Assembly (NCBI RefSeq): GCF_016432865.1
Contig: NC_067401.1
Location: 99,696,001-99,760,000, forward strand
Origin: Antechinus flavipes
Lineage: Eukaryota
Reading direction: 5' to 3'
Length of the DNA stretch: 64,000 bases
The translations under genes and the position numbers were made by a program. Below the pieces are notes generated by a model, which worked only from the letters and a program-made list of their open reading frames with translations, searched no databases and was not told the origin of the DNA. This document shows positions 15,271 to 63,784 of this stretch, in pieces (positions within the stretch are counted from its first letter, which is position 1; each line of letters opens with the position of its first letter).

Positions 15271-16107
15271 GTATGGACAGCCATCATTGGGTAATGTGGG
15301 TAGGTTTTAATACTATAGCATTTTACAAATAGAATATATTATAGGCAAAACACAGATATTTTGTATTATAGGTAAAACATTACAATAGCTTTTAAGTTAT
15401 TACAGTGCCACTCACCACCTAATAGTTGTGTTATTAAAATTTCAGTCTCTGCACACTTCCTTCAATTTTCTTACAAATTTGAAGAGTACAGTACTATGCT
15501 TACTATTGAAGTTTCTTGCTTTGTTGTTAATATTTCCCCTAGCCAGTTTAAAATACAGAGGCTGGCAGAAGTCTTTCTAATTGGCTTCTTTACTACTGTG
15601 AAATGAGATGTTTCCTTAGAATAGGTTTAATGGATGGTATATATCTTTGATGATAGAATTTATGCTTGCACAACCCAGGTTTGGGGGTATCTGTTTCAGC
15701 TTATTATCATACTACTTGAAATGGCATATACTTTTTCATGTTCCCCTTGGGCACCTCCAGTTAGAAAACTGATGTGTCCCCTAAAATCCATGCTTGAATT
15801 TTCAGTTCTCACAGCCTTTTTCCTTGTCTCTCATGCCATGGATGAAAGTGTTGGAATGGAGGGAACACTGAGAAGAATAGACTTCCTCTTTTGATTCACA
15901 AGTAATTCATAAGTAACCTTGTTTTCTTACTTAACTAAGTAACTTCATTAACTTACTTGAGTTTTGATAAATAACTTAACACTAAAAGTTTTGGTTTGTC
16001 CAAAAATTAGTAGCTTGAGAGTCAGGTAATCTAACTTGAAAATGAGTCTGTGGAAAGCTTTGGTTGCTAAATTTCCTCTTTTCTATTTTTTTTTTCCTGC
16101 CCTACAG

Positions 16108-16684
16108 TGTTGGAGTTTCAAGATCAAAAGATGTACCACCATTTGGTCCACCAATTCCCAAAGGCGTGACTTTTCCAAAATCAGCAGTTTTTAGGGACTT
16201 CCTATTAGCCAAAGTGATCAATGCTGAAAATTCAGCCCACAAGTCAGAAAAGTTTCGAGCAATGGCTACCCGAACAAGGCAGGAATACTTGAAAGATCTA
16301 GCAGAAAACTTTGTGACTACAGCTACAGTGGATACCTCCGTCAAGTTCAGTTTCATTACATTAGGGGCAAAGAAAAAGGAGAAAGTAAAACCAAGGAAGG
16401 ATGCTCACTTATACAGCGTTGGGGCTATCATGTGGAATGTCATAGCACGAGACTTTGGCCGGTCTGCTGACATTGAATGTCTCCTAGGAATCTCCAATGA
16501 ATTTATCATGTTGATTGAAAAGGAGTCTAAAAACGTTGTATTTAACTGTTCCTGCAGAGATGTTATTGGATGGACCTCTGGATTAATGAGCATCAAAGTG
16601 TTTTATGAAAGAGGAGAATGTATTCTTCTGTCTACAGTGGATAATTGCACTGATGATATAAGGGAAATTGTTCAGAGATTAGGA
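16108..16684 (+). CDS. SIPA1L2: SIPA1L2 exon, end of RapGAP domain and linker ([15 protein letters not shown]...[10 protein letters not shown])
   Basis: Acceptor cctacag|T, donor GGA|gtaagt, 577 nt, phase 2 to 0; core of ORF 16064..16735. Confidence 0.97.
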
Positions 16685-19600
16685 GTAAGTACATGTCATG
16701 CTCTAATACTTTATTCATGTTTGTTCCTCCAATAGCAGAATCAGGGAATTCTCCCTTGAACACATTTTTTAGAAAGAAATAGTTACTATTTCTCATAGAA
16801 ACAAAGCTGTCAGACATTGTACCATTTTGAACAGTTGCTGAGTAAATGGAGGCAGAGAGGAGTATAACTTCCAAACTGATCAGAGAGGACAGTTTTCTTG
16901 GTTCAAAATGATTCAGCGTGATCAACGGCCTTCGATAATTTTTCATGGAAATTGTTATTTTTCTATCTGTCAGGCAGGGTATCTGAAAACAACACATACA
17001 CATATTCAAATCTATCAGCCTCAACTCCAACCAGGGCAGCCTTAAGTCAGAACAACTTTGAACTGGCTGTGTGTGCTCTCACCATAAAAGAGTTTCGATC
17101 CCATGGCAATTTTAGGCGTTTGCTGACAGAGTGATGGGGGTACCTCCGGGATTGGGGGGGGACTATATCAGAATGATTAGTCATCTCCTCATGCTCCTCT
17201 AAGTTATCCCCGAGGCTGTAAATGAAATGCAGTAATTGATGCCGATTCATTTTGTGCTTAACCTGGTACATACTAGGATATCAATTAGCACTTCCCTGGT
17301 ATAGTTTTTGTGGAACCCAAAAAGTTACAAAGGGTCCACACTAATGTGGAAAAGAAAGAAATGTTGATATCGGTCTTCCTACTTCGGCCACTGAGGGATC
17401 AATATTGTTTAGTCACTGTTCAATCATTCACAGTAAATCGACTGGAATTCTAGCTTCCTCATCGCCCTATTTTGTTTCTAGTGAGGCCTGGAAAAAACAA
17501 ACAAACAAACAAAAAACTTCCTACTCTGTTGCCCCAAAGTAGTATTTTGTGACTAATAAAATCTTGTCTGCGTGCTTTCAGGATTAATTTTGGGCCTAAC
17601 TTGCCATTTATCACTTGTGTCTCCAGAAAGACCCCCGTTCTTATCTCAGAGTGCAAAGAGCAACTCTTAAACCAAAAATACTCAAGACACTACTATTATC
17701 AGGACATATTCCCCATGAGAATAAGGGGCCATAGTCAAATGAGACAAAAATAATTTGAAATAGTCAAGGTGTTTATCTTGAAATAATGGTAATAATTGAT
17801 AGTTTGTTGAGCAAGTTTTTCTCCCAAAGTGCTCAGAAGAAAAGCATAATATGAAATTGCCATGATTTTTACTTTGTAATAGTAGTTAGTCATGTTTATT
17901 GAACAACTTTTCTTACAGAAAGCTCCATTTTTTCCCCACATTTATTCTCACTTCATGTCTTTATGTATATCAACCATAATTTATATTCTAGGAAGTTCGT
18001 GGTATCCTAGTGCTCTGACACCAGGACTTAATTTAAATATTTCAGATTTTTAGGCCTCTAGAGAATGGCATAATGTGGCATTTTATGAGAGGGTAAAGAC
18101 TAGCTCCTGTAATGAATGACCCTGAAGCGTCTCATCTTTGAGAATTGCTGATTGGTGTTTCAGGGCTCATCTTATCTATGTATTCTATACAGAAGCTCTC
18201 TTTGGGCTGAGCTGAAATCTACTAAAAGAAACTTTTGTGAACTCCCAGGCAACCCGTTTGTCAGCAGTGAGATCTTCAAAGATGCATTTTGATCTAAAAT
18301 ACTCTTTTTAAAGATTAGAATCCTTGGGCCTACAAGGAGCTTTCTTCTTCTTTTCTTCTTTATTCCATGGATCTCTGGCAGAACTTCAGACTAACCCTAA
18401 TATAAACCTACATCCACATGAATAGTTCTAGGGATTTCAAATTGATGTACCTTGTGTTCGTAAGTTTAAGATTTCCTTCTTAATCACACTTACTTAGATG
18501 TTCTTTTTTCCTAGATGACCTTTCCTTGTCCCAGTCATTGTACTTATTTCTTACAATTGTCTCTACAGGATGGCAAAGAAGAGAGAATTTTATTCTCATT
18601 TAATGCGGGTCCATTTGCTGTACAGTGAGATAAATATTAAATAGGAAATGAAGCAATCTTGATCCTAGTTTGAACTTTGCCACTTATTGAGGGTCTAGAC
18701 ATCTAACATTTTAGAGACTCCTTCCTCACTCAAAAGTGAAAGGATTGGACAAAGTGATTCCTTAGATTGTAGCAGGCCTAAATTTGTTTTGTTTTGTTTT
18801 TGATGAAAAAAAAAAATGAGATTTGGAAAAAACTTCATAGATTGTGTCTTTGCTGATCATTTTGCAGTTGAGAAAACCTAAGCATAGAGTGATGAAATGA
18901 TTTCTGATAGAAGGACATAAAGTCATAAAGAAATAAACCTAGAGTGATCAAACTACAAATCCAAAACGCCCTAGCAAAATAAGAAATCCCAAATACCAGA
19001 TTCTTAACAACGCAATCCCATAGTTTGAAAACATTATGCATCATTGCCAGAGAAATATGAAACTACAATATACTTTTAATGTGATCTTTCTTCCTAATGA
19101 TGATGACATTTATTCTCACTGACCTAAATGACTAAAATGATGGATAAATCCGCCTTTACCTTCAGAATAATCAAGGAAAAATGTTTGCTTAGTGAATTCC
19201 AGAGATTAGGTGGAGCCAAATTAGAAAAGCGATCACTGAGAAAACTTAAGAACAAGGGAATTGTCTAGATATTGTATAAATAAATTCCAGAGCTCTCCCC
19301 ACAAAAAGTAATTAATAGGCTAAGAGACTCCTTTGACTACATCAATGCGTTTGACTCATTCACAAATTCAATGACCTTTGTGTGTTTATCCAGCAGATCT
19401 ATTTTTCCCATCTAATAGATTTAATGTCATACTAATCATTGACAATACTTAAGAAGGTCTTAGAAAAGCTGAAGTAGATGTTCAAAAGACTCATTGTTTC
19501 ATGTATTAGTAGTAAGAAAAAGTTGTCTGTGTTAAGATTTTCTCTAGATGTACGCCATTTTTATTTAATTAAAGTGTTCTGGTTTGGGTCTTGAGTAGAC

Positions 19601-21020: not shown

Positions 21021-23615
21021 AGAAGAGATTCAAGAGTAAATGGCAGATGTATATAGGGACTAAGATGAGTTTTTGCTAACGACAAGAATTTAAGGCAAAG
21101 GAAAGAGTTTACAGAGACTAGAAAGAATTAGAAGAACACAGTGTATTTAAAAATAAAAAGGAACTTCTTTACTATGAGAATGGCATCCAGGAAAATTGAC
21201 CGATCAAGAAATTATGCAGTTAAATTTGACTTTTCTTCTTGGTGCATCAGTATTTTGATCTGTAAAATGAAGACATTACTTTTCTCTGTGAATCTAATAT
21301 AACACTTGTGTCAAGAAATTTAAACATAGATATAATGTCACGTCTTGGGACTTCTATAGTCTCAATCTTATCATTCATATAAGGGCTTCGGCAACTTGTA
21401 ATTCTGGATGTGATCCCACAGATACACTTGGTCTCCATGCAGATTTTTCATTTTGTGGTCCTCTAAAAGACTTTATGATTGGCCTCCTGCAGTGGTCCCA
21501 TGAGAAAATTTCTTTTCAACTTAAAATGGCATCATTACATATTCTTAAAGGAGTGTGTTACCGTTAGAATTGCAATTGGTGGTGGGAGGGGAGGAATAAA
21601 ATGAAAGCGCGTGGTTGAAGTGCAGAATTTGTTCTGGGCTTTTGTCACGAGAGTGTCACGGATATCATTTATGTTAGTTCAGTTTAAAGATAAGAATTCT
21701 CAGCCTTTTCAAATTCAGTCACTAACTAGGGGTATCCATTTCTCTCCAGAGTTCTTTAATGCTCAAGCCATCCCTTGTAGGTGTGAGAAGGTGACTCATA
21801 ATGTATAGAAGAACAGTAACTATAGAAACAGCCAACACAATGGTGATAGATGGCGGTCCTTTTCCACAGCTGTTCATACAGATGTAGCTTTTATTAAAAT
21901 AACTCTATAGGCATTCAAAGCATGCCTCATGGAGATGTACTGCTTATTAAACTGAAACTTTATTCAGTGGTTTAGACCTGGGAATATGTGCATGATGTTT
22001 TCTAGCTTTGAGCTTCTTACAGATACCTTAATATCATCCTCCTCATCAAGTGTTACTTAATGAGAAACATTTTCTCAATACTTCTACCCTTATAAGGTGA
22101 ACGAGCGATAGAAGAAATCAATATCTGCTTGTCATAGAAGGCATTGTGTAGCTCTGAAGGGAACTGGGTAGTGACAGCAGTCTCTCCAAGACAAAAATCA
22201 AATGTGTAGAATTTGGCAGAATTTATACTAACTGGAGTGAATCATAAATTTTTTAGTTCTCTTAATGAGACCCAACAATGGAGTTTTAGATCTTACTGTC
22301 TATTTTGTAATATTGAAAACTGTGGAATTCTTGAACTTGGAAAAAAAAGAAAAGGGAGGAGAATAAAGATTTTCCTTTTCATTAGTTTTGGATCCAGAGA
22401 CAGTCTCTTTCCTTGAGGGATCTTGTTAGTGATTTATTGGAATTGAGGAGGAAGGCATAGTCCAAAGAGACCCCCCCCCCAAAAAAAATAAATTCTGTCA
22501 GACTTGCAAAATTCTCACCAGCCTCTTCCACTCTAACCAGTATCATGATGGACAACTATACTACGTCTGGCAGCAGTTGTAGATTTTAGAAAAAGACAAA
22601 GCAAGGTGGATGAAATGAACATTTAAAAAAATTTCTAAGCACCTGGTATGGATATGAGTTTATCTTTAGACTGATTGTACTAAATGATGAGTAAAGAGCT
22701 ATGAGAAAATGTTATATGCTTTCTGTCAACATTTTCTGAATAATATAGCATTTTTTAAAAGAAAGTCTCAATTTTTGCATTTTGTTAGTACGTTAGTAAT
22801 AGAAGTTTTTATTTTAGAAAGCAAAGTAAGTCACAAAGAAGTTTTGTTGAAAACAGTGAGAAAAGTGATCTATTCTTTCCATTACCTAAATGAGAAACAC
22901 ATATGCAACATGTTCAGCAAGTAATCTTCTAGTCTTTGCTTAAAAACATCCTTGGGGTTGAAGAAAGATTTATTATCTCTCCAGACAGCCTGTCCTACTT
23001 TTGGATAGTTTCTACTAAGAAATTCCTCCCCTCCTTTATCACGCCTAAATTTCCTTTTTTAAAAAAATATTTTTTATAAAACCTTGCATATCTTTAAAAC
23101 TGATATTAAAAAAAAGAAAGATGACAATTGTCTTCTTAGCCCATCCTAAGTATTCTCAAGTTCTGGGTTAATGAATTATAAGAAAACACGCTTCTCTGTG
23201 AGGAGATATTTATCTGCTTGTAAAGAAGAAAATTATTGATAGGCTTTGACTTCATTTTTTGTGTATATAATACTCTAATTATGGGGAATTGATACAACTG
23301 TTTCTGTCTTTAAATATTACGGAAAATAGACAGCTGGTTATCCCCACTTGGAAAAGCAGAAGAATCATCAGATTTTATATATCTGAAAAATCCCTACAAT
23401 ATTAGTTTTACAGAAGAAAACCTTTGTTATCCACAAATGCCTAAGCAATGATCACCCTATATTAGTTGATGATGGGTGTCATATTCCATCAAAATTTAAA
23501 AAAAAAAAAACCCTAGCTCTAAAAATGAGTTTCTCCACATGATCAAGGGAGCTTTTGAGGGTGGGGGATAGTCGTTTTTTGATAGTTTATTTTTAACTAT
23601 CTCATACTCCTTTAG

Positions 23616-23890
23616 ATAGTGACCCGAGGATGTGAAACTGTGGAAATGACATTGCGGAGGAACGGGCTGGGCCAGCTTGGCTTCCACGTCAACTTTGAAG
23701 GAATCGTCGCGGATGTGGAGCCCTTTGGCTTTGCCTGGAAGGCTGGTCTGCGCCAAGGCAGCCGCCTCGTCGAGATCTGCAAAGTGGCCGTAGCCACCCT
23801 GACTCATGAGCAGATGATTGACCTGTTACGGACTTCTGTGACAGTCAAGGTAGTCATCATCCAGCCTCATGAGGATGGATCTCCCCGGAG
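23616..23890 (+). CDS. SIPA1L2: SIPA1L2 exon, PDZ domain ([25 protein letters not shown]...[10 protein letters not shown])
   Basis: Acceptor tttag|ATA, donor AG|gtaagg, 275 nt, phase 0 to 2. Confidence 0.97.
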
Positions 23891-24149
23891 GTAAGGGACC
23901 AAGGGTCCGGCTCTGACACCCCTGGGCGGTAACTGTTGTCATGGAACTGTAACGGAGCGACCCTTGACCATATGGATCAAGGCCTAAAAGAGCGGCTGGA
24001 TTGAGTCTCTCTTTTTTAATATTAGTTGGATTGTAGCCATTAGAGCAAGTCAGGTTTAATTTAATTATGGTGGAGTAAATGATAGGACATAACCTATTAA
24101 ATAATTTAATGGGAAAGGGGACAAATCTTTTTTAAGTAAGTGTCTTTTA

Positions 24150-30809: not shown

Positions 30810-30990
30810 TTTTTGTTCAGTCATTTTCTTTCGTGTCCGACCTCATTTGGGGTTTCCATGGCAAAGACAGTGTTGTGGTTTGCCACTTCCTTCTCCAGCT
30901 CATTTTACAGATGAAGAAACTGAGGCAAAAAACCCATACCTAGTGTCTGCAGCCAAATTTGAACTCCAGAAGATGAGTCGTCCTGATTTG
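30810..30990 (-). mobile_element. Mar1-type CORE-SINE
   Basis: tttggggtttccatggcaaag...ccttctccagctcattttacagatgaagaaactgaggc. Confidence 0.85.
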
Positions 30991-37245: not shown

Positions 37246-37573
37246 TCTAGCAAGTGGTTAGTAAAAGAGCAGCGGGTGAGGATGCATATGTCTCTCTGCA
37301 CTAAACCAAGTGGTAATGATTTTGTATTATCAATGGTTGGATGATTTTTACTTGGTTGAGGAATCATCCCTGTCACATCCCTAAGCATAGATAATAGAAA
37401 CTGGAACACAAATAGGGAATTTGGAGGCTCCCCGTTGCGCTCGGGTGAGGTTTGGGAGGACCCCCTGCGCTGTGCCATCGTGGGGTGTTTCCCCTCTGGC
37501 AGAGCATGAGCACGTTTCAGTCCGGGGGCCGTGGCCAGGCTGCGTGACTCGGTGTCCCTTCTCGGTCCTGCAG

Positions 37574-37831
37574 GGGTTGTTCGGAGCTCTGCCGGATCCC
37601 GATGGTGGAATATAAGCTCGACAGTGAGGGCACCCCCTGCGAGTACAAAACCCCTTTCAGGAGGAACACGACTTGGCACCGGGTCCCTACTCCTGCCGGG
37701 CAGCCTCTGTCCAGGGCCTCCCCGATCCTGGGCACGGCCGACCGGCTGCCCTGCCAGCAGCTTCTCCAGCAGGCGCAGACGGCCATTCCTCGGAGCACGT
37801 CCTTTGACCGAAAATTACCGGATGGCACAAG
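37574..37831 (+). CDS. SIPA1L2: SIPA1L2 exon (GCSELCRIPMVEYKLDSEGTPCEYK...FDRKLPDGT-R)
   Basis: Acceptor ctgcag|G, donor AG|gtaaaa, 258 nt, phase 2 to 2. Confidence 0.96.
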
Positions 37832-38694
37832 GTAAAATCCTTCGTCCTTAAATTCCTCCCCTTTCCTTTTTCCTGTGCGCTCCTTATAGGCTTTTATTAT
37901 TGGCCTTCTTAGGGTGGGACTTTCCTTGTCTCTGTCCAGCCCTGTCCAGACTGTTGGGCTGAGGTTGCAGGTAGCTTGGGCAGAAGGCCGGGAGCAGCCA
38001 ACCAGGGAGCGGGTCATCCCTCTCTGATTGTAGTGGTTCTGTGGGAGAGGCCCGGAGTCCCCCCCAGAGCCAACGGCGCCTCCCCTTCCCCCACTGTGAA
38101 GCTGCGAGGTAGTCTGTGCTCCAAGCATCCTGGGTAAGGTGCCCTGGGAACTGTGACTGGGTCTGTGTGCACAAGTCATGAGCGTAAATAAGACAAGTCC
38201 ATCTTCTGCACAATTCGTGCCTAAATGCCATTATCAGAACATAGGGCACCACTGCCAGAAGTTCTGTGACCATTAGAGTCCTTCTGCTCTCCTTTCCTCC
38301 CTTAAAGGTCAAGCATAGTAAAGTCTTGTTAAAAATTCTTATTTGAAATGGATTTCTGTCGATGAGAGGGGAAGGCATGTAAAACCTGTAACTTTTTAAA
38401 AAGGCTTTTTTTAGAGTTTAGAATTTTTAACTTGTGTAACTTTTTAATTTTTATTATATAGGTAGATACAAATATGTATACACATATGCACATGGGTACA
38501 CATAAAACACGCATACATTTCTCCATCTGTGTGTGTGTATCACACCATGGTAGAAGAATAAATATGTATCTATGTACCGTGTTAATTCATTTGGATAAAA
38601 ACTTATTTGCAGGAACTTCTCTAGATGGCAAAATAAGAGTTAATTTATTTGTAAAGAATCTGATCAACACTTATTCCCCCCACACACACACATA

Positions 38695-43968: not shown

Positions 43969-44080
43969 GCCTCATTTTACAGACGGGAAAACAAGTTTAG
44001 AGAAATTAAGGGACTTGCCTGCTGTCACTCAGTACTCGGGTGAGGAGAGATTCGAATCTGGGTCTTCTCCAGTTTCTGAG
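43969..44080 (-). mobile_element. MIR/CORE-SINE fragment (GC-shifted)
   Basis: cctcattttacagacgggaaaac...aagggacttgcc...gattcgaatctgggtcttc. Confidence 0.7.
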
Positions 44081-44374
44081 ACCCTAGTGTCTCCCGAGGA
44101 ACCGTGGCAAATAGTGCCGTGGAAACATTCAGTCCTCTCCATTCGGGTAGTGCTTCATAAAAGGCTCATCAGCTGACTGGCGGCTTGGTATCCGATGCGC
44201 TCTGCCCAGGATTGTTGCCGTTACTGTTGGGGCTTTTAAATCATGCGTCTGTCTCCTGTTGGGGGTAATAAGAGGGTTTGGTTGTTAGGAGAGAGATATG
44301 TGAGACTGATAGGCTTTATAGATGAATGAGGTAAAAATCTGTTTTAAAAAAAACCACTGTTTTTCCTCTTCAAG

Positions 44375-44763
44375 ATTGGAGACAAAAACTGTTCCAGTCA
44401 CTCCAGCAGTAACACCCTCTCCAGTAATACATCCAGCAACAGTGACGACAAGCACTTTGGCTCCGGAGACCTCATGGACCCCGAATTGCTGGGCCTGACC
44501 TACATTAAAGGGGCCTCCACGGACAGCGGCATCGACACCACCCCCTGCATGTCCACCTCGATGATGGGCCCCCTGCACCTGACGGGCAGCAGGTCCATGA
44601 TGCACAGTCGGGCGGAGCAGTGGGCCGACGCCGCGGAGGGGCCCGGCCCCGAGGAGGAGCAGCCCAAGCTCTACGCGGTCCACAGCTACCCCTCGGCCAT
44701 CTCTGTCAGCAACACTGCGGAAGGCAGCCTGGGGGACCTGAGCGAGATCTCCTCCCATTCCAG
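44375..44763 (+). CDS. SIPA1L2: SIPA1L2 exon (IGDKNCSSHSSSNTLSSNTSSNSDDKHFGSGDLMDPELLGLTYIKGASTDSGIDTT...EISSHS-S)
   Basis: Acceptor ttcaag|ATT, donor AG|gtacgg, 389 nt, phase 0 to 2. Confidence 0.96.
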
Positions 44764-44879
44764 GTACGGCACCGGGGGGCCCGCCGCGTGACCCACGGCC
44801 CGGTTGGGCTGATCGGCCCGGGATCGGGCTCGGAACCGCAGACATGCGCTGCTGGCTCTGGGAGTTCTGGCAGTTGGGA

Positions 44880-45030
44880 CCCTCTTTCTTGGCAGAGATC
44901 CCGCCCTTTCCTTCTCCAGTGCGTCACGCGGATGAGGAAACTGAGAGAATGGGGTTCGGTGACGGGCCCAGAGTCACCCAGCCAGTGTCCGAGGCGGGAG
45001 CTCAGGAAGGCGTGGCTCCGCTGACTCCCC
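44880..45030 (-). mobile_element. Mar1-type CORE-SINE, strongly GC-shifted
   Basis: tttcttggcagagat...ccttctccag...gatgaggaaactgag...gtgac..gcccagagtcac..agccagtgtccgaggc...ctcaggaag. Confidence 0.75.
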
Positions 45031-45879
45031 CAGAAGCCTTCCTGGGGGGCAGGAAGGAAATGCCGTGGAATTGGGAGACACTGGGCAGAAGATTGGGGTG
45101 GGCTTTCCACTGCCATTCTGTGCGTTGGCTCATTGGTGGAACACGTGGAGCTCGCGGTTATGGGCTGTGCTGAGCAGTTTGGGAGGGCGGAGGGACACCC
45201 CTCCTTTTGTGAGGGTGCCATGGGTTCCCCCACAGCTTCACAAGCGGCCTCCATAGAGTTCCCCATTCCCTGCAGGAGGATCCCCTCCCCACAAGGCCTT
45301 TCCTGCTTCTCCGAGCACCTTTTCCCTTTCCGGTTACCTTCATGTATTCGATGACATAATCTTTGTACTTGGAGATTTGCACGTTGCCCCTCCCTTAGCC
45401 TGGGAACCCCCTGAAAGCAAGGATACAGTTTGCCTTATGCTTAGTGTGCTACTTGGCCCACAGCAGACAGCCAGTACAATCTTGGTGAAAGACTATTATA
45501 TGGTATATAGATTATATGACATAAATATTATATATGATAAAATGCATATGAATTCATCTCTTTGGATGAGAGAAGGGGACTGTGGAAATAAAGTGAATAG
45601 GGATATTTTGGCCCTTTTGCAGAGAGATACATTTTGCTTCCAATTGAATGTTGATAAGTAAATTAATTTCAAAAATCCATATAAATTAAGTTATCTGTGC
45701 GATTTTCTTTTACTTGAATCATGACAGAAACCAGAGATGCACATAGGTGCATGCATGTATTTGTGTCTATGTATACTCAAGTACAGATGTTTGTGTGCAT
45801 ATATATGCATGTGCTCATTTTACATACATGCAGACATACCCACATATAGTTAGATATATTGATTGATTGATAGATCAAA

Positions 45880-46120
45880 ATCAATTGGTAAGCATTTATT
45901 AAGTGCCAACTGTGTGCCAAGCACTGTGCTACATGTTAGGGATATAAAAAGAGACAAAAGACAGTTTCTGCCCTAAAGGAACTTATAATTTAATGAGGAA
46001 GCTGACATTTAAACAAATTTACAAACCAAGCAGTATACATGAAAAATAGGAAATGATTAAAAGAGAGAAAGCACAAGAATTAAAAAGGATGAAGAAGGGC
46101 CTCCTTAGAAGAGGGGATAG
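45880..46120 (-). mobile_element. L2 3' end
   Basis: aagcatttattaagtgccaactgtgtgccaagcactgtgcta... Confidence 0.85.
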
Positions 46121-47509
46121 ATTTATACTTCCCTTACTTCAACGCAGTGTCCATAAGTTGCTAAAAAAGGAGCTGTTAAGGTAAAGCATGTTTCTTCATG
46201 AACTTCCTTCTCTTCCCCTTTAAATTGGGAGTTATGATGGAATATTAGAAATGAGTTAGTGGGGGCATAGAGAGGTATGTGCACAAGACATGAGGCTGTG
46301 TTTCTCTAATTGTATTCTGTAACACAGACTTAATGGGAAGAGTTAGACTAAAGCTCTTTGTTTTCTAATAGAAAGGAGATGTGAATTAATAGATCGTTAT
46401 TTGACATTGTTAGTCAAGGTTGAAACTAAATTTAAAAGATGTGTTCTCATTAGAAATATGTAACATATGATCATTAGTGGTTTTGAGTCAGACTTCATGC
46501 ATGCTACAAACAACAAAAATCAGAGAATCTTGATAATAACTTAAAATTGGGATTTTAATCCCTTTTCTCAGTTTAATTTAAAAACTAAATCAAGAAAATT
46601 CATGTGAAGGGCTAGCCCTAGGGGGAAATCTTGAAGTAAACAAAGTTAGCTTTGGTAACTCTCTCTACCATATCATTCTCCTGGGCTGTAGCCCATATTT
46701 CTCCCTACCAGTTCCATACATCCTTGATTTTCCTTTCTTAACTCAAATTTAAAATGTATCTGGTATCTTTCCTCAAATCTTTCTGATTTTAAGGACAGTT
46801 GGTTGATCTAAAAAAAAATACTGTGTTAATAGTTGCTGGTGAATTAGTCACATTATATATTGCTCATTCTTTGGTACCTTAAATGCATCTGAATAGGAAC
46901 TTTTGGGAAACGCAAAGCTTTTAACAGCATATTGGTTCTTATGGTAGAAATTCTGAATAGAGCCATAGGATTAATATTACAAGGTAGACAGACCGTTGTG
47001 TTCAGATCACACCCTGCAGGTGACCACCTCTTCTGCCAGCCCTATAGATGGGGAGTCTTCTCTGCCTCCAACTGGCCATGAAGACAGACTGTTAAATAGT
47101 TTAGGTCCTTAGTTTAGTCATTAAATGGTTCAGGTCAGAAGAGTCATAGAAGGTGAGGTATTTACCCAAAGCCACACAGCAAATTGGTGAAAGAGTGGGA
47201 ACAAGAACATAAGACTTCTACCAGCAGATCAGTGCTCTTCCCCAATGCTTCCCAGCATTTAGTGAACATATAGTGAACAAGGATCTAAACTTCTAGCATG
47301 GAGAAAACATACCAACTGTTGGAGTAAAATATTTAAGTGACTGGCAGCTACATTCCCATGTTTGACATAAAAATGAACAGAACTTCCCTTTCCAGGGCAG
47401 GGAGTAAGATGCTAAAAGGCGTTTCATGACTATCATGTATGTTAAATGTGCTTCTTGTGTATAATTTTTTTGATAAGTCATCACTGTAAGTGCCTTCTGT
47501 CCATAGTCA

Positions 47510-48565
47510 CCATGGAAATAACTGAGAAAAGCAAAAGCACAGGGACCAGAGATGGAGGGTCATATTCAACAGACCTGGAAGCGAGCTTTGCTTATAGAAT
47601 ACTAGGAAGGAGTGGAAAAGTGTAAGACTGGAAAGGTGAGAAATGGGCTGGGTTATGAGGAGCTCTCAGAGCTAATGGACTGTATATTTCATCCTTGAGA
47701 TATTAGGAACTGAATCTTACTGAAGGGGAAGGGACACCACCAGAAAAATTCCCTTAGCTGTTGAGCAGAGCATTGGAGTGGGGTGGGACTTGAGGCAGAG
47801 AGAATCATTAGAAGGTTACTGTGATGGTCCAAATGAGAAATGATGAAGGTCTGAAGGAGATTTGTGAAATCTTGTGCAGGTACATGGGAGAAGACTTAGC
47901 AGTGGATCAGATTTCGGGGGTGAGAATAAGGAATCAAAGATGGCACCAAATTGTAAGCCCGTGTGATTGGGGAAATGGAGCCATTGACTGTAATAGGAGT
48001 TAAGGAGAGTTAAGAGAGAAAGTTGAATTCTTCTGGGGAAGTGTTGATCTTGAGCTGTCTATTGAACTATGGGATTGAGACTCCCAAGAGACATTTGGTA
48101 ATATGTAGCACAGTCCATGAAGCTAGTGATAGTTATATAGATCTGGAAATCATAGGCATAAAGATTATAATTATATCTGTGAAACCTAATGATATTATCA
48201 AGTGAAATATGAAAGAGGGAGAAGAGAAGAGGATCACATCCTCAAAGGACTCCTAGATTTAGTGAGCAAAATACAAATAAAGATTAACAAAAAAAGACAT
48301 TAGGAGAATCAGCAAAGGAAAACAGTAAGAAAGTGTAACAGTGTCATGAAAATCCAAAGAGAAAAGAACATCCAGGAGAAGGGTGACCATCAGCATCAGA
48401 AGCCACATTGAACAGACCAACAGATGTGGTAAGAAGGTATCACTGGTAATTTTGGAGAAGGTGATTTCAGATGAATGATGAGGTCAGAAGCCAGATTGTT
48501 GAGGGTTTAGAGGACAGTGATAGGAAAGAAAATTATAGCATCCAGTGTAGACAACTTTCTCAAAT
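47510..48565 (-). mobile_element. L2 body fragment
   Basis: gacttgaggcagagagaatcattagaaggttactgtgatggtccaaatgagaaatgatgaagg... and continuing L2 ORF-derived sequence. Confidence 0.7.
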
Positions 48566-48779
48566 ACTAAATACGCTCCTAATTCTTGGAGCATTTCTCA
48601 GTGTGTAAGTTATTGGTCTCCTTTTACTGCTTTAAAAAGCAAAACTTCCCCTATGTCTGCTATATATGATTTAATCATTTTCTTAATTATCTCTTCCACT
48701 TGAGGAATTAGGAGAATTGTAGAGGCACTCAGTTTAGATAGTTCTGTGTCTTGTTATTAGCACTAGAATGTTTTGTGTT

Positions 48780-48914
48780 GTTTTTATTGTTAAGTCATTT
48801 CTTAGTTGTGTCTGACTCTTCATGACCCTTTTGGGGCTTTTCTGTCAAAAGTACAGAAGTAGTTTGCCCTTTCCTTCTTCAGCTCATTTTTGCAGATGAG
48901 GAAACTGAGGCAAA
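48780..48914 (-). mobile_element. Mar1-type SINE 3' half
   Basis: gtgtctgactcttcatgaccc...ccttcttcagctcatttttgcagatgaggaaactgaggc. Confidence 0.85.
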
Positions 48915-51900
48915 TTTTTGCTGTTCTTTTTTTTGATTTTTGGGAATGCTAATAACGAGTGGTTAAAATCAGATGTTAAGGTTACCCTGGTGTCATTTAT
49001 CTAAATTCTCCCTACCTGATTTCATGGACAGTTGAATACCTAATATCTACAGTACTTTGGCTTCCTATTCCCATATTAATGTTTTATGCAGAGCATAGCA
49101 GTTGGGAAAACACCTTTTATAATACCTTATTAGACTAATCTAGTTGGCATGATAAATAGGATTTTATATTGCCATCAAATATTGTTTGGGTGGTCATCTT
49201 TGCTTGCAAGGTGCACATGCCTCTATATAAAAGCATCTTTTAGTGAGAGACTAGATATTTATGCACAAGTGAAGCAGCTTTTTTGCATACCTTAACTCTT
49301 ATTTAAATTAGCATGGGTCATACTGCTGGCAAGCAAATACATGTGCTAGATTGAATTTCTGATTGGTTTTGTTTTCCTTCCCTCTCTTTAAAATTGCATA
49401 TGTGCACATCTGTTGTAGATAGTGAACTGCGTTGTAAGAGTTGAATCTTTTTGCAATTTGGCTTCCTTTTACTCATAATTCACAGTTGATGATGACTTTG
49501 AACTCCATTTCCAACTCGATACTGGAGGCTTTTGCTTTCACCATCACCTAGATTCGGAGCTTCAAGGAAGCTCACTCCAGCTAGTATCAACTAGAAACAT
49601 CTCTGCATCTTAATATGGGATTCAGTCATGAAATTCTAGCATGCAATTTTCTGTACCTTTTCTTCCTTCCTGGACAGACACATGAAAAAAGACTATAGCA
49701 TAAGATAGCTTGTTTTGATTTAACCCAGTAGAAAAGGGAAAAAAATATGCTTAAATTATTCAAACACATGGGATCTATCTTAAGCTATTTTGATTCTGTA
49801 AACTTTGAGAAAATTCTGTGGAGTCCAGATGAGGAGAAAATAGATATGCATTCTGCGTGCCAGATTTGTGTTCTCGTGCTTTGTATTCAATTCGCACAGA
49901 CATATAAACATGAAGAAGGCATGTATATTATGTACTGGGTGGGGGAGAAGGTGACTTTGAGTGCCTCTGATTTTTTTCAATTTGTTTACTCCCTATTGCA
50001 GACAGAGATTTCAATTCTTCCTCAATTTTGTTCTGAGTCTCAGTTATCATTAATTGGTATGGCCCCTAAAATTCATCACTTCATAGACATTCTTCTGCCA
50101 GTGATCTTTTATAGTCAAGATTGCCCATAGTTTAGCTTCTTCCCTTTTTTTCTTTCAAAATTCACCTCTAGGTTCATCTCCTTTTCTCTTCAGCTGCCAG
50201 TACCCCCAACTCTCCACAAATCCCCATGTATTTACATTGAATATATTTTAAATATATTTATGTCTATAAGTTGTTTTCCTTAATAGAATATATTCTCTCT
50301 GAGGGCAAGAACTCTATAATTTTTATTTTTGTAGCCCACAGTGTCTATCACATAACTGTATAAATATTTGTGGATAGAATAGAGAATCCAAGCTCAGTTC
50401 CATGGAACACAGAAACAGGACTTTAGTAGAAAATGAATTTTTTTGTGGTAGAATGAAAAATAAAAAATCCCTGGAGAAAACAGAATTGATAAAACAGAAC
50501 TTCTTGTTTTGTGTTTTTTTTTATTTTTATAAAATCATAATTGATTATATCTAATATTTGGATATTTACTTCCTTAAAGGAAGTAACTAATTACTCTCCT
50601 AGAATGTGCAATGAAAAAATAAACAAATTATTAAGATAGTAATAAATCTTCCTTTTTAAAAAAAAAGACAAACTAGCTTTAGAAATCTTAAGAAGCTGCA
50701 TATTTTTCATATATAAATAGCAGTCCTTAGACTGGGCAGTTATGGCATGCTGAAGGAAAGGGGATTTGACCTTATTTTGTGTCCCCTCTTAGAGACTTCT
50801 TTATACAGGCTGTTTTATTTCAAGCAAAAGGACCAGTGACTGGAATCTGACTATGGATGTTACTGAAAGTTTAAGGTCAAATCATTTTATCTTCTGATAT
50901 CAGTTATCTTAGTACTGTGGAACAACTCATTCCTCCCTTCTACTATGTAACCAATTTCTCTCTATTGCCTGCATCTCCTTTACATATACACTATCCCCTT
51001 CCCAACTTTCTTGAGCATTTTGGAGACGACAGAACATCTCGTCCTAAGAAAGAATACTTCTGATGAACAAAAATGATAGTGCTCCAAATTTAGGGGTGTT
51101 CTAGGAAAAAGGGGTGCAGAAGGAAACCTGAATATCATTCATAGGCCTAAAATTGATCCTGAAAAGAAGAATGAAATGAAAAGTTTCATATTTTCCTCTC
51201 CAGCTTCTTTTCAATATCTTGTTTTGCCCCAGGTGTCTAAATTTCTTGAAAGTAGCTAGGTGTCTATATGGTGTTTCATATTGCTGTTAAACACTTCTCT
51301 TCTCTCTTTCCTATTGTATGAAGATTATTCTCCTCTGCAGCATTAACAGATGGAAAAATAAAAGTTAAATCATTTCACTTTTTTCTATTAATATATTATC
51401 ATTCTGAATCAGGCACTTTTTTCACCCTTGTGTCTCTGTCCCCCATCAATTGCCAAGAAAAGGTCTTTCTTTGGCATTTAACTGTGATTTCAAACCTTGG
51501 CTTATTCTAGCTCTTTGTCTCGCTGATAATTTTCTTATAGAACTGGTTCTTTTTTGTGTTTGTCTTTAGTTACTAGATCTTATTTCATTTGAAAGTATCT
51601 GCCATTTTCAAATCTTGATTCCCTGTTCATCCCCTTTACTTTCTTTTTATACCCTCTCCTGTTAATTGTAGTTGATTTTGAGAATTTCATTGCCAAAATC
51701 TTGTTCTTGAGAGCCTCCCATCCCACTGGAGGCAATCCCTCGTGTACTGCCTCGGGCCAGGAGATTGTACCCCACCTCTCTCCAAATTGCTCAAATTTAA
51801 CGGACACCCCTCAGAGCAAGCTTGGGCACCTCTCCTTATCTCACCACAGCTGAGGATGGCATGTTTCTCACTGAATGTTTGGTGCAGTAGATACGCTTCT

Positions 51901-54520: not shown

Positions 54521-55897
54521 GAGATCAGGCTCATTCTTGTAGATCAGCCCCCTCCCATGGAGGTTATTTTTGAAAAAGTTAGAGGCAAGGTCCAGCTTGT
54601 AGCTCTGGACTAGATCACAGAGATTGGACTTGCCAACAGTCCTCCTTGTAAAAATACTAGAATGTCCTTCATGGATTTCTTAAGAAGGTTTTTGAGGAGG
54701 CCTTTTTTGTACATGCTTACAAACTCACCAATGAGTACTTCTACACTGATTTTCATCATTTTCAAAGCCCTCCCTCCTTCCCTTATCGCCTGTCTGTTTT
54801 TCATGTGTTAGTCCTTGAAATACTTGAAAGTGCATGAAAATGTACACCATTTTAGGAACAGGGATGGAATTTTTTTCCCAGAGAAATGGTTATTAGTTTT
54901 GTGTTTGTAAGTGAAAGTTTCCAATTTAAGCATTTTTTTCTGGAAGCTTTTGCTTAGCTTGTTGTAACAGCATCCTCTCTGAACCAAAATGCCTTCGAGG
55001 TGCCAGTGATGAGAGCCCTAAACAGCTCATTTGCTGGAGACTTAGCTGCCTCGGTACATCTTAATTCCTAGAGTTCAATAGCGTAGGCCATTGCCTCTGC
55101 CGAGGCTACTCCACTCGCTGATTGTTCTGCATTTGGCAGGAAGTAATTGGACTCCAGTTTACGTCTTTGGACATCTACAGTTGTTCAAAGTGTGTTCTCA
55201 AAGTAAACCCTTTAAAGATCACTTTTGCTTCCCTCCTAGAAGAGAGCTGAGAGACAGTAATTCAGTCTGACAGTCTTTTGTTGACCATAAATACATTTTT
55301 ATATACTGATAATTAAGGGAGACAGATGTTTTATTTATCCAGACAGCTTTATGAAATTGCTGATAATTAAACGTGTTTGGCATATGCCAGGAATGGTTAC
55401 TCTTGAACCTCGGGCATCTCCTCTGGACACGATAGGATTGGGACCTGGAGTCCAGGGGTCTGACTACCCTTAATCTCCAAGTTTTTAAGAAGCACACACA
55501 CTGATTTAGAAATACTGGCTCATCTCTATGTTTTAAAATCAATCTAATGAATTATTGAAACTCTGTTTCCAAATCCAAACTAGGAAAAAAGGAAACAGGC
55601 TTCATTGGAGGAAGCGGCAGCTTGTTTCCATATATTGTGCTCTGGGAATCTGATTTGTTTCTGAATTATTCAAAAATCTTATCTGGCAATTGAACTTAGT
55701 TCATAAATATAAAATGACTTGGGGATTTGGAGTGAAGGGGGAGCAAAACTGAACGGACTTAATAATAAAGAAATGCACATGTGTATTTGTGTATGTGTTT
55801 TTGAACACTAGTTATTGCATTTTAATTTATAATTTCATAGGCAGTTTGATGGTTGGCTCCCTGATCCTCTCTCTTTTATTCTGATCTATTCAAACAG

Positions 55898-56051
55898 AAT
55901 GTATAGTGATATGGAAGCCATGTCCACATCAAGTCAACATCAGGCCGTGGTGGAGGATGCAGTTTCTGAAACCCAACATGTCCTGTCCAAAGAAGACTTT
56001 TTGAAGTTAATGCTTCCTGGCAGCCCTTTGGTGGAGGAGGGCCGAAGAAAG
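55898..56051 (+). CDS. SIPA1L2: SIPA1L2 exon (MYSDMEAMSTSSQHQAVVEDAVSETQHVLSKEDFLKLMLPGSPLVEEGRRK)
   Basis: Acceptor aaacag|A, donor AAG|gttagc, 154 nt, phase 2 to 0. Confidence 0.94.
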
Positions 56052-56218
56052 GTTAGCCAATTTAAAAGGATTTTCAGTCCCTACAAAGAACAGATATAGT
56101 TCACTGTCGTCCCTAAAAAAAATCCCGATAGAACCCACTGTTTCTTACAAATTGACTGTATTTGTTTAATATTGGGGTTTTGTTTGTTTGTATGTTTTGC
56201 AAAGTGGTAGATTTATCC

Positions 56219-59102: not shown

Positions 59103-59719
59103 TCAGAATCAAGTATTTTAGTAAACACTATGTAAGGATTTTTTCTCTAAATACAGTTACAACAATTTCATGGAATTCTTTTTCCAACTAGACTTTTCTG
59201 TTTTCTTTGGATTTATTTGGGCTCCTTCAAGTTTCTGATATTTGAAATTTGTTTTCTTGTCATGTGGATTAGATTGAACCTCACATGCAATTGATCGGTG
59301 CCGAAATCACTGCGTATTAAAAGCCTAGTTGTTTCAAATTAAAATCCAGCAGCTTTATGTGTGCATGTGAGTGAATGTTGCCTGACAGGGTAGCCTTCTC
59401 TGTGTCCGAAGCCATCATTGCCCTGAGATTGTGGGGGTCATTTAGCATTTAGAATTCACAAAGTGGCGGAGCACCTCATCGATTCCTGGCCACATTTAGC
59501 CGAATGTCAGAGAGGAAGCACTGGGCCGGAATAACGGCTCTGAAACACCAGGGTGTTTGGCCAGGGGAGTCAGTGGGTTTCCTCCAGAGCCTTCCTGGGG
59601 AAGAGCTCACAGCGAGTTTTTAGGGGGCTGCATCAGCCCATGGCCCCTGGCGGCGTTCCCTGCACGCCTTCCTTGTTTACTAACGCCCTTTCCCTTTCCC
59701 CTCTCTCCTGACCCTCTAG

Positions 59720-59939
59720 TTCTCGTTCTATGGGAACCTGTCTCCCAGAAGGTCCCTGTACCGCACGCTCTCGGATGAGAGCATCTGCAGCAATCGCCGG
59801 GGATCGTCCTTTGGCAGCTCGCGGAGTTCCATCCTGGACCAAGCCTTGCCCAACGACATCTTGTTCAGCACCACCCCTCCCTACCACAGCACGCTCCCAC
59901 CTCGGACCAACCCGGCCCCGGGCCTGGGGAGCCTGAGAA
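59720..59939 (+). CDS. SIPA1L2: SIPA1L2 exon, SPAR C-terminal region (FSFYGNLSPRRSLYRTLSDESICSNRRGSSFGSSRSSILDQALPNDILFSTTPPYHSTLPPRTNPAPGLGSLR-N)
   Basis: Acceptor ctctag|TTC, donor A|gtaagt, 220 nt, phase 0 to 1. This frame is not in the ORF track. Confidence 0.96.
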
Positions 59940-60404
59940 GTAAGTGGCGTCCGGGGGTGACTGTGTGACCAGGCGCCGGGGCTTCTGGGCTGCACCCAGA
60001 AGCCTAATCTTCACCTAATCACCTTCACCTAATCCCACCTGGCTCCTGAGCCTGCTCGGCTGCCTGCTGGCTGAGGGACCTTTCCAAAAAATCACTTTCC
60101 TCCTCTCTGCAACATGGATTCCTTACCCGTAACATGAGAGGGTGGATCTAGAGCTGGTAGCAATCTAGACCCCCTTCCGCACTTGACAGGTGGGGAAACT
60201 GAGGCCTGAGGAGAGTAAAAGCCTTGGCCACGGTCACACAGGTAGTGTCAGGCTTCTCTGATTTCCATGCTCTTCGTCTCTAACATGTTTTCTCCTGCCT
60301 GCTGGCTCAAAATCCTGTCTGTTTTTAAATTTTTTTTCTTTTTTAAATTTTCATTTATGAATTCTCTCCCTTCCTCCTCTATGGTCTTGTAATAGAAAGA
60401 CAAT

Positions 60405-60623
60405 TTTGTTGTTGAAGTTGTTCAGTCGTGCTCCCGTTTGGGGTTTTCTTGGCAAAGATACTGAAGTGATTTGCCTCTTTCTTTTCCAGATCATTTTATA
60501 AATGGTGAAATTGAGGCAGAGTTAAGTGACTTACCCAGAGTCACACAGCTAATAAGTATCTGAAGCGAGATTTTAAGTCAGACCAGCACTCTATCCACTT
60601 CATCATCACATAGCTAGGTGCCC
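60405..60623 (-). mobile_element. Mar1-type CORE-SINE
   Basis: tttggggttttcttggcaaagatactgaagtgatttgcc...gttaagtgacttacccagagtcacacagcta...ctaggtgcccc. Confidence 0.85.
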
Positions 60624-62697: not shown

Positions 62698-62714
62698 TGT
62701 GTGCGTACGTGTGC

Positions 62715-62756
<42 letters not shown>
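62698..62756. repeat. 59-bp perfectly alternating purine/pyrimidine tract (GT with GC/AC interruptions)
   Basis: Direct reading. Confidence 0.95.
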
Positions 62757-62757
<1 letters not shown>

Positions 62758-63784
62758 GGTTAAAATCATTATCCAAATGTTTTTGCATCTCTCCTCTCAT
62801 GCTGCCTTATTGTTTTCAAACCAGAGGTAGTTTTTCACTAAAATACTACTGTCCCGTAGTACCCATTTTATTACTTTTTCTTAACAAACAACAAAAAAAA
62901 CAAAGAATTGACCAACATTTGCTGAACTCCACCTTTCTCCCTGTCATTGGTGGGCATCCTCCTGCGGCAGAATTAGTCAGCCTCATCCCTCCAAAAAATT
63001 GGTGATCTGAGTGCCAAAATGCCTCCAGGAAAAAAAAAAAAAAGGAGATGTTTTAAGAGAGATGGCAATTTCCACGCCCCCAGCCCCTGCGTGTTCCTAA
63101 CTTGTCTTGCTGAAGACTTACAGCTTTGTCTCACACCCGTGGCGGTCTCCCTGGTTCTGAGAGTCTGTCTCTCCCCACTGGGGCGTGTTTCATGGCCCTG
63201 GGCCTGCCTCGGTTACGGGTCGCGGAGAGTCCGACTCTGGGAACAAGGATGCAGTCTGCAAGGAAGCCTTCCCAGCAGGGGCTGCCAGGGTGCCCGCGTT
63301 CCAGAGCTAGGTAACACTCCCCCAGAGGGCTCTAGCTCCCTGGAGCCTGCGGAGGTGTGGGTTCCGTCAGCCTTCCTGGCACCGACTGGGGAACTCCAAT
63401 CTCCCGCATCCTAGAGACGGTGCTTGCAAGGAAGAGTAGGCCAGGGAAAGATCTGCAGCAGAGCCAGCGGGCGCTGATTCAGTCCCTGCACGTGCCGGGG
63501 CCGTGCTAAGGGTGAGGATGCAGACAAGTCCGAGCATTCTGCCCTCCCGGAGCTCCGAGGCCACTCAGGGCGACCACGTGCATGGAGGAAATCCTGCGGC
63601 AGAAACCCAGCTGCTTTGCCATCACTCTCCACGTGACCTAGCACAGGTCCTGTCCATAAGGTGGAAGGACTGGGTGAGGGGATCAGTGGAGTCTTTTCCA
63701 GCTTTCAGTCTCTGATCCTGCATGAATATTAAGGTGCGACCCCAGCAATCACTTACCTTCACAATATAAGGGGAATGGCTTACG

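What the first reader, a model, noticed from the sequence alone, without database searches (positions are those of the whole stretch)
44880..45030. An ancient SINE rewritten toward G/C: internal-control evidence for GC-biased gene conversion
Seen: 44954-44984 (gttcggtgacgggcccagagtcacccagcca) versus the sister copy at 60521-60551 (gttaagtgacttacccagagtcacacagcta) differ at 7 of 31 positions, and all 7 are G/C here versus A/T there. The core motif cattttacagatgagg (intact at 30901) has become cgtcacgcggatgagg, creating new CpGs. Neighbouring MIRs at 43969-44080 and about 60170-60260 show the same trend. A neutral repeat has no codon or promoter reason to gain GC, and methylation would remove CpG. 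Inference: a strong local W-to-S fixation bias (recombination hotspot) that also sweeps the adjacent exon and may push non-adaptive amino-acid changes into it (e.g. AEGPGPEEEQP). This is the most distinctive signal in the window.
Basis: partly seen in the sequence, partly recalled or inferred. Interest (0 to 1): 0.7.

Follow-up and report, generated by a model that had tools for sequence, protein, structure and literature searches.

The report
Old SINE rewritten toward G/C
An old, normally AT-drifting mobile-element fossil beside a SIPA1L2-type exon of a marsupial has been pushed strongly toward G and C. [quoted passage not shown]

Summary
The MIR-type SINE at 44884-45002 was polarised against 16 other copies in the window. 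It carries 24 weak-to-strong (W>S) and 3 strong-to-weak (S>W) changes, against 132:171 in the others (p = 3.6e-6). Without the CpG-ambiguous sites the count is still 17:3.

W>S per site is up 2.5-fold and non-CpG S>W is down 3.6-fold. The changes are strand-symmetric and include transversions. One fixation-bias parameter (B about 2.2) fits both shifts.

The copy lies in a roughly 1-kb GC spike at 44351-45450, with GC 0.60-0.72 and CpG o/e about 0.6-0.7. The background is 0.356 and 0.18. The spike ignores the exon-intron border: exon GC3 climbs from 0.55 to about 1.0.

A second copy inside another spike (60178-60249) is also biased (8:2). Copies just outside spikes, including 43971-44068, are not.

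The best reading is GC-biased gene conversion at a long-lived, CpG-island-like hotspot. Recombination itself was not shown. The claimed amino-acid effect is not supported.

This is a clean single-locus example of a known process.

The parts
44884..45002 (+). Focal MIR-type (CORE) SINE copy, 121-240 nt downstream of the splice donor. GC 0.61, 8 CpGs, W>S 24 and S>W 3.
   Evidence: Leave-one-out profile E = 5.5e-13.
44375..44763 (+). Coding exon of a SIPA1L2-type gene (129 codons plus 2 nt). It has an AG acceptor and a GT donor. GC3 rises from 0.55 in the first 20 codons to 0.95-1.0.
   Evidence: Orthologue fragments cover 100% of it with the same 3' boundary. Neighbouring exons carry Rap_GAP, PDZ and SPAR_C.
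44351..45450 (.). GC spike, defined as 300-bp windows at or above 0.55. Mean GC is 0.60, with a peak of 0.72-0.75 at the exon-intron junction. The background is 0.356.
44450..45100 (.). Core of the spike. It meets the formal CpG-island criteria (651 bp, GC 0.657, CpG o/e 0.63).
60178..60249 (+). Second MIR-type copy, lying inside another GC spike. It is also W>S-biased (8:2, GC* 0.77).
59401..60250 (.). Another roughly 0.85-kb GC spike, around the SPAR_C exon at about 59720-59965.
60428..60622 (+). It lies outside any spike and is itself drifting toward AT (W>S 6, S>W 17).
43971..44068 (+). Neighbouring MIR-type copy about 300 bp upstream of the spike. It is not biased (12:13), which sets an upstream limit on the effect.
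37351..38300 (.). GC spike around the exon at about 37548-37832. The MIR copy just outside it (37128-37031) is unbiased (12:13).
63001..63750 (.). Fifth GC spike, with no exon that Pfam can recognise.

Best explanation
A roughly 1-kb segment centred on the 3' end of this SIPA1L2-type exon has been under a sustained fixation bias that favours G/C over A/T alleles. The bias has lasted since an old MIR-type SINE inserted there. The most likely cause is GC-biased gene conversion: mismatches in meiotic heteroduplex DNA are repaired toward G/C. This would happen at a recombination-initiation site that stayed in place for a long time.

The bias acts on all sequence in the tract. It raised the SINE from about 0.46 to 0.61 GC and created 8 CpGs in it. 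It drove the exon's third codon positions to about 1.0 GC. The result is a CpG-island-like spike in a 36% GC intron landscape.

About 37% of the SINE's A/T sites were replaced, so the hotspot must have been long-lived or recurrent. That fits the stable, CpG-island-associated (PRDM9-independent, 'default') hotspot type better than a short-lived PRDM9-directed one. Germline hypomethylation of the island probably helps to keep the new CpGs.

Shown: the polarised W>S excess, the S>W deficit, the strand symmetry, the scale, and the disregard of the exon border. Inferred: recombination as the cause, the hotspot type, and hypomethylation.
For: 1. W>S is 24 against S>W 3 in the focal copy, and 132:171 in 16 other copies (p = 3.6e-6). 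Without changes that could be mispolarised CpG decay it is 17:3 (p = 2.5e-4).
2. Both directions shift. W>S per W site is 0.37 against 0.145 (p = 2.5e-5). S>W per S site is 0.0625 against 0.227 (p = 0.006).
3. The ancestral SINE is almost free of CpG, so the S>W deficit is at non-CpG sites (3/48 against 140/703). Hypomethylation alone cannot produce that.
4. One parameter fits both shifts. GC* is 0.855 against 0.39, giving a difference in B of 2.2 (bootstrap CI 1.3-4.0) by the formula in PMC11161765. At B = 2.2 the expected factors are 2.47 and 0.27; the observed ones are 2.55 and 0.275.
5. The changes are strand-symmetric and include transversions (A>G 8, T>C 8, A>C 4, T>G 4). That argues against transcription-coupled asymmetry.
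6. The control copies have GC* 0.39, close to the background GC of 0.356, so they behave as neutral markers.
7. The spike is about 1 kb long and ignores the exon border. The upstream intron is at 0.34, GC3 runs from 0.55 to 1.0 along the exon, and the first 100 bp of the intron are at 0.75.
8. The only two SINE copies inside GC spikes rank first and second of 17 for GC* (chance 1/136). Copies 200-400 bp outside spikes are unbiased.
9. The pattern matches published gBGC signatures. W>S-biased exons with equally biased flanks occur at a scale below a few kb (PMC2631073). gBGC at stable CpG-island hotspots has been offered as the explanation for the GC-richness of CpG islands (PMC11161765).
10. 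Marsupials retain PRDM9 but may also use promoter-type hotspots (PMC10166821).
Against: - There are no recombination, linkage-disequilibrium, allele-frequency or methylation data for this locus.
- No orthologous DNA could be obtained, so the polarisation rests on 4-15 in-window copies per column. These copies are a mix of MIR-type subfamilies.
- This is a single locus with about 30 substitutions. PMC11161765 itself warns that GC*-based inference is not suited to single loci.
- Directional selection for GC or CpG is also a fixation bias. Sequence alone cannot separate it from gBGC (PMC2631073).
- Four of the five spikes sit on exons. An exon-linked cause other than recombination therefore remains possible.
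- Across the 15 copies outside spikes, GC* does not correlate with flanking GC, so there is no graded regional signal to add support.
- Six changes fall within 8 bp of the core motif (44923-44930). That could be one complex mutation rather than six independent fixations.
Confidence: 0.62

Rival explanations
1. The segment is a functional intragenic CpG island, such as an alternative promoter or an enhancer. It is kept unmethylated in the germline, and selection for GC- or CpG-rich binding sites drove the W>S changes. The SINE was simply absorbed into the island.
For: The core 44450-45100 meets the CpG-island criteria (GC 0.657, o/e 0.63, against 0.356 and 0.18 in the background). New CpGs persist in the SINE (o/e 0.72). 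Orthologue ORF fragments of several other vertebrates also read through into GC-rich sequence just after this exon (P0013, P0014, P0022, P0030), which hints at an old, shared feature. An unchecked scan note, s1-204768, reports an LTR beside a CpG island with about 29 CpGs against about 3.
Against: Hypomethylation alone cannot raise W>S at non-CpG sites (17 such changes) or lower non-CpG S>W. Selection would have to act on most A/T sites of a 119-bp fossil and on nearly every third codon position at once. The SINE's total divergence (27%) is not reduced compared with the other copies (23%), so there is no sign of constraint. No transcription start could be tested.
Confidence: 0.17
2. A local mutational bias toward G/C raised the W>S input without any fixation bias. 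Error-prone or GC-biased synthesis during repeated break repair, or non-B DNA, could be the source.
For: W>S per site is 2.5-fold above that of the control copies. The dense cluster of 6 changes in 8 bp at 44923-44930 looks like a multi-nucleotide mutation event.
Against: A pure increase in W>S mutation does not predict the 3.6-fold deficit of non-CpG S>W changes (p = 0.006). Total divergence is barely raised (27% against 23%). I know of no mutational process at the 1-kb scale that is strand-symmetric and favours both transitions and transversions toward G/C.
Confidence: 0.08
3. The spike is a relic or an artefact. It could be left over from an ancestrally GC-rich region around conserved exons while the rest of the intron filled with AT-rich repeats. 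In that case the SINE signal would come from mispolarisation (a GC-richer source subfamily, or parallel decay in all other copies) or from an assembly error.
For: Four of the five spikes hold exons. Marsupial autosomes are uniformly GC-poor (PMC6124049). The in-window copies are a mix of MIR-type subfamilies, and no repeat library was available.
Against: At the changed sites the A/T state is shared by up to 13/13 of the other copies. These include the five copies that share the marsupial-type 5' part with the focal copy. Removing the CpG-decay-prone sites leaves 17:3. The control copies' GC* (0.39) matches the background GC. Six independent runs from two studies hold 57-67% of the sampled words of 44770-45700, so the stretch is not a one-off assembly product. 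A relic model cannot explain GC gain after the insertion.
Confidence: 0.06

Closest known systems
gBGC tracts, or 'hotspots of biased nucleotide substitution' in mammalian genes (Berglund, Pollard and Webster 2009, PMC2631073)
   Same: A single exon and its non-coding flanks carry a clustered W>S excess. In that paper the flanks of the top exons show 60 W>S against 11 S>W. The scale is below a few kb and the pattern disregards the coding boundary.
   Different: Those tracts are recent bursts on the human lineage, found with outgroups and linked to male recombination rates. Here the bias is integrated over the long life of a SINE, is much larger in total (37% of W sites replaced), was polarised with paralogous repeat copies, and has no recombination data.
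PRDM9-independent ('default') recombination hotspots at hypomethylated CpG islands (Joseph et al. 2024, PMC11161765)
   Same: They are stable, CpG-island-like, 1-kb-scale sites with raised GC*. The same formula, B = logit(GC*hot) - logit(GC*u), gives about 2.2 here.
   Different: That study covers placental mammals, pools thousands of loci and uses methylation and DSB maps. This is one intragenic site in a marsupial with none of those data.
Interspersed repeats used as neutral markers of equilibrium GC content (the classical approach to isochore evolution; from general knowledge, not checked here)
   Same: Copies are compared with the family's ancestral state to count W>S and S>W and to derive GC*.
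   Different: Those studies pool thousands of copies against a curated consensus. Here 17 in-window copies serve both as consensus and as controls.
MIR-type CORE-SINEs of mammals, including marsupial-specific relatives
   Same: The copy has the conserved core (the ...TTTTACAGATGAGGAAACTGAGGC-type motif). It matches 16 other in-window copies, and five of them share the 5' part with it.
   Different: The subfamily name could not be assigned because no repeat library was available. The focal copy has lost the recognisable core through W>S changes.

Membership tests
GC-biased gene conversion tract / hotspot | Excess of W>S over S>W substitutions after polarisation | tested here: met
   24:3 against 132:171 in the controls, p = 3.6e-6. 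17:3 without CpG-ambiguous sites.
GC-biased gene conversion tract / hotspot | Fixation-type bias: W>S raised and S>W lowered reciprocally, including at non-CpG sites | tested here: met
   The rates are 0.37 against 0.145, and 0.0625 against 0.227. Both fit B of about 2.2.
GC-biased gene conversion tract / hotspot | Regional action on coding and non-coding DNA alike, at a scale of about 1 kb | tested here: met
   GC3 rises from 0.55 to 1.0 along the exon. The intron reaches 0.75 and then falls to 0.26-0.37 by 45464. The spike spans 44351-45450.
GC-biased gene conversion tract / hotspot | Strand symmetry, affecting both transitions and transversions | tested here: met
   A>G 8, T>C 8, A>C 4, T>G 4.
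GC-biased gene conversion tract / hotspot | Coincidence with raised meiotic recombination or DSB activity | not testable with these tools
   No recombination map or DSB data were available.
GC-biased gene conversion tract / hotspot | W>S alleles segregate at higher derived frequency than S>W alleles | not testable with these tools
GC-biased gene conversion tract / hotspot | W>S excess confirmed with orthologous outgroups | not testable with these tools
CpG island (Gardiner-Garden and Frommer criteria) | At least 200 bp, GC at least 0.5, CpG o/e at least 0.6 | tested here: met
   44450-45100: 651 bp, GC 0.657, o/e 0.63.
CpG island (functional, hypomethylated) | Unmethylated in the germline, or with promoter activity | not testable with these tools
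   No methylation or transcript-start data were available.
MIR-type CORE-SINE | Significant similarity to other family copies across the core | tested here: met
   A single-copy query gives E = 2.1e-5. A profile built without the focal copy gives E = 5.5e-13.
MIR-type CORE-SINE | Match to a curated subfamily consensus (Dfam/Repbase) | not testable with these tools
   No repeat library was available. A consensus recalled from memory was not used.
SIPA1L2 (SPAR-family RapGAP) gene | Rap_GAP, PDZ and SPAR_C domains in order on one strand, with the exon matching SIPA1L2-named proteins | tested here: met
   Pfam gives Rap_GAP at 16046-16732, PDZ at 23616-23891, and SPAR_C at 55833-56096 and 59720-59965. 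Hits P0017 and P0064 are named SIPA1L2 by their source. The paralogue assignment rests on those names only.

The most novel reading that the evidence does not exclude
In this dasyurid marsupial, recombination initiation may be anchored for tens of millions of years at a chain of exon- or CpG-island-associated sites. There are five roughly 1-kb GC spikes in 64 kb of one gene, set in 36% GC background. That would make the fine-scale landscape bird- or dog-like (stable 'default' hotspots) even though marsupials retain PRDM9. Old SINE fossils inside the spikes would then serve as dated recorders of hotspot lifetime.
Probability: 0.2. Interest if true: 0.55.

Novelty: new member of a known kind. 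Interest (0 to 1): 0.3.

Why it matters
This locus is a compact example of a non-adaptive force reshaping both a neutral repeat and a coding exon's synonymous sites. It carries its own controls, because the other copies of the same repeat in the window evolve toward the background composition.

The practical consequences are ordinary but real. GC3 near 1.0 and clustered W>S changes in this exon should not be read as codon-usage selection or as adaptive acceleration. CpG-island callers will flag this intragenic segment whether or not it is a promoter.

If the hotspot's long life were confirmed, it would bear on how stable recombination landscapes are in marsupials. Fine-scale maps for marsupials are scarce.

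Tried and rejected
2. Laying contigs of four runs (organisms A, B, C, D) on 44770-50700, to polarise substitutions and look for variants. Nothing was laid. Later local scripts read the window file only.
3. Other repeats inside the spikes as further internal controls. blastn and nhmmer self-searches found only the two MIR-type copies.
4. A graded relation between GC* and flanking GC across all copies. None was found (Spearman rho 0.1-0.24, not significant). The effect is confined to the spikes.
5. Amino-acid-level bias. The exon's GARP and FYMINK composition and its private replacements, set against 16 orthologue fragments, show no GC-ward shift.
6. Hypomethylation as the sole cause. Rejected, because the ancestral SINE has almost no CpG.
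7. Transcription-coupled asymmetry. Rejected on strand symmetry.
8. An exon in the fifth spike. There is no Pfam match in any frame segment, which is inconclusive.
9. The large representative-protein search was not run.

Full report
**What is there.**
The window is 37% GC. On its + strand it carries a gene with Rap_GAP (16046-16732), PDZ (23616-23891) and SPAR_C (55833-56096, 59720-59965) exons. That makes it a SIPA1L-family gene.

The exon next to the finding is 44375-44763, with an AG acceptor and a GT donor. Its translation finds about 70 exon-sized ORF fragments from other vertebrates. Two are named SIPA1L2 by their source. All end at the same ...SSHS-R boundary.

Earlier notes of this scan call the genome an antechinus, a dasyurid marsupial. 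I did not verify that. The SINE type and the low GC are consistent with it.

**The observation.**
- The two 31-mers differ at 7 positions, and all 7 are G/C here against A/T there.
- The altered core motif is at 44922.
- Iterative nhmmer finds 17 MIR-type SINE copies in the window.
- A profile built without the focal copy still recovers 44884-44999 at E = 5.5e-13. The element is therefore a real, old SINE copy, about 27% diverged from the family majority.

**Polarisation.**
For each copy I took the majority base of the other copies as ancestral.

| Measure | Focal copy | 16 other copies | Test |
|---|---|---|---|
| W>S: S>W | 24: 3 | 132: 171 | Fisher p = 3.6e-6 |
| W>S: S>W without TG/CA to CG changes | 17: 3 | 124: 171 | p = 2.5e-4 |
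| W>S per W site | 0.37 | 0.145 | p = 2.5e-5 |
| S>W per S site | 0.0625 | 0.227 | p = 0.006 |
| GC* | 0.855 | 0.39 | |
| CpG count per copy | 8 (o/e 0.72) | 0-3 | |

- Support for the A/T ancestral state at the changed sites is often unanimous, 11/11 to 13/13 of the other copies.
One is a decay in the sister copy, which is itself AT-drifting (6:17).
- The 7 changes removed in the second row are those that could be mispolarised parallel CpG decay.
- The family ancestor has practically no CpG, so the S>W deficit is at non-CpG sites (3/48 against 140/703).
- The changes are strand-symmetric and a third are transversions (A>G 8, T>C 8, A>C 4, T>G 4).
- The control GC* of 0.39 is close to the window's background GC of 0.356.
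- Using the expression B = logit(GC*hot) - logit(GC*u) from PMC11161765, the difference in B is about 2.2 (bootstrap 1.3-4.0).
- B = 2.2 predicts factors of 2.47 for W>S and 0.27 for S>W. The observed factors are 2.55 and 0.275.
- These numbers are rough. The counts are small, there is no multiple-hit correction, and the copies differ in age.

**The setting.**
- The copy sits in one of only five GC-rich segments of the window.
- Its segment, 44351-45450, peaks at 0.72-0.75 GC exactly at the exon-intron junction.
- The core 44450-45100 formally qualifies as a CpG island: GC 0.657 and o/e 0.63, against a background of 0.356 and 0.18.
- The spike ignores the coding boundary. The intron just upstream is at 0.34. 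GC3 rises from 0.55 in the first 20 codons to 0.95-1.0. The first 100 bp of the downstream intron are at 0.75. GC falls to 0.26-0.37 by 45464.
- The only other SINE copy inside a spike (60178-60249) is also biased (8:2, p = 0.023).
- Copies 200-400 bp outside spikes are not biased: 43971-44068 at 12:13 and 37128-37031 at 12:13.
- The two in-spike copies rank first and second of 17 for GC*, which has a chance of 1/136.
- Outside the spikes, GC* does not follow flanking GC.
- One copy outside any spike, 30059-29879, is mildly W>S-rich (13:7). I have no explanation for it.

**Mechanism.**
W>S is raised and non-CpG S>W is lowered. The pattern is strand-symmetric, covers about 1 kb and acts on a repeat fossil and on synonymous sites alike. 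Together these are the signature of a fixation bias toward G/C.

The established process with that signature is GC-biased gene conversion. Published cases show the same anatomy: W>S-biased exons with equally biased flanks, confined to less than a few kb (PMC2631073).

The cumulative change is large, so I infer a long-lived or recurrent hotspot. The known stable type lies at hypomethylated CpG islands, and gBGC there has been proposed to explain why such islands are GC-rich (PMC11161765). Marsupials keep PRDM9 but may use both hotspot types (PMC10166821). Their generally low GC is attributed to low recombination (PMC6124049), which makes isolated spikes stand out.

The persistence of new CpGs suggests that germline hypomethylation accompanies the bias. 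The 'CpG island' and 'gBGC' readings are therefore probably two sides of one thing rather than exclusive.

None of recombination, methylation or allele frequencies was observed here.

**What is not supported.**
- The amino-acid inference fails the available test.
- The exon's GARP fraction (0.28) is low among the fragments (0.22-0.41).
- Its nine private replacements go in mixed directions. A>T, P>S and L>M run against the bias, two M>L run with it, and the rest are neutral or ambiguous.
- Without a close outgroup this remains a weak test.

**Limits.**
I worked beside those places and sent none of their letters to any search tool afterwards.
- The look-up of sequencing runs showed that six runs from two studies hold 57-67% of the sampled words of 44770-45700. 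More distant organisms hold 4-10%. The stretch therefore exists in independent data, but the run names are coded.
- No human contig was knowingly handled. The unnamed Logan protein fragments were used only as proteins.

**Verdict.**
The process is well known, so this is a good new example rather than a new kind of thing.

Noticed in passing
window 3-3326 (+): An open frame of 1108 codons runs off the window start. It has endonuclease and reverse-transcriptase domains (RVT_1 E = 2e-46), so it is an L1-type ORF2 that looks intact over this length. That suggests a young LINE copy upstream of, or inside, the SIPA1L2-type gene.
   Followed up: partly
window 23601-24000, 37351-38300, 44351-45450, 59401-60250, 63001-63750: The window has exactly five GC-rich segments (0.4-1.1 kb, GC 0.56-0.60, CpG o/e 0.47-0.62) in a 35.6% GC background. 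Four hold SIPA1L exons and extend hundreds of bp into introns. The RapGAP exon (16046-16732, GC 0.39) and the exon at 55833-56096 have no spike.
   Followed up: partly
window 63001-63750: This GC spike has no Pfam-recognisable coding segment in any + frame. It may be a non-exonic island or hold a short exon that was not recognised.
   Followed up: partly
window 44923-44930: Six substitutions (5 W>S, 1 W>W) fall within 8 bp of the SINE core and create three CpGs. That is unusually dense, even for this copy, and could be one complex mutation event.
   Followed up: no
window 30059-29879 (-): A MIR-type copy in AT-rich surroundings (flank GC 0.34) shows a mild W>S excess (13:7, GC* 0.60). The spike model does not explain it.
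   Followed up: no
alignment A2 (P0013, P0014, P0022, P0030 against P0001, P0016, P0021): In several unnamed vertebrate contigs the frame reads through the same exon's donor into Gly/Pro/Ala/Arg-rich (GC-rich) sequence. In others it reads into AT-rich sequence. The GC-rich state downstream of this exon may therefore recur or be old in some lineages.
   Followed up: no
window 44552-44600: The exon carries several methionines (MSTSMM, SMMH) where orthologue fragments have Leu, Val or Ile. L>M at codon 44564 is private against 16/16 fragments. This is unexplained.
   Followed up: no
window about 62700-62760: A (TG)n/(CA)n microsatellite, seen as a CVCVCV... translation, lies just upstream of the fifth GC spike.
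   Followed up: no
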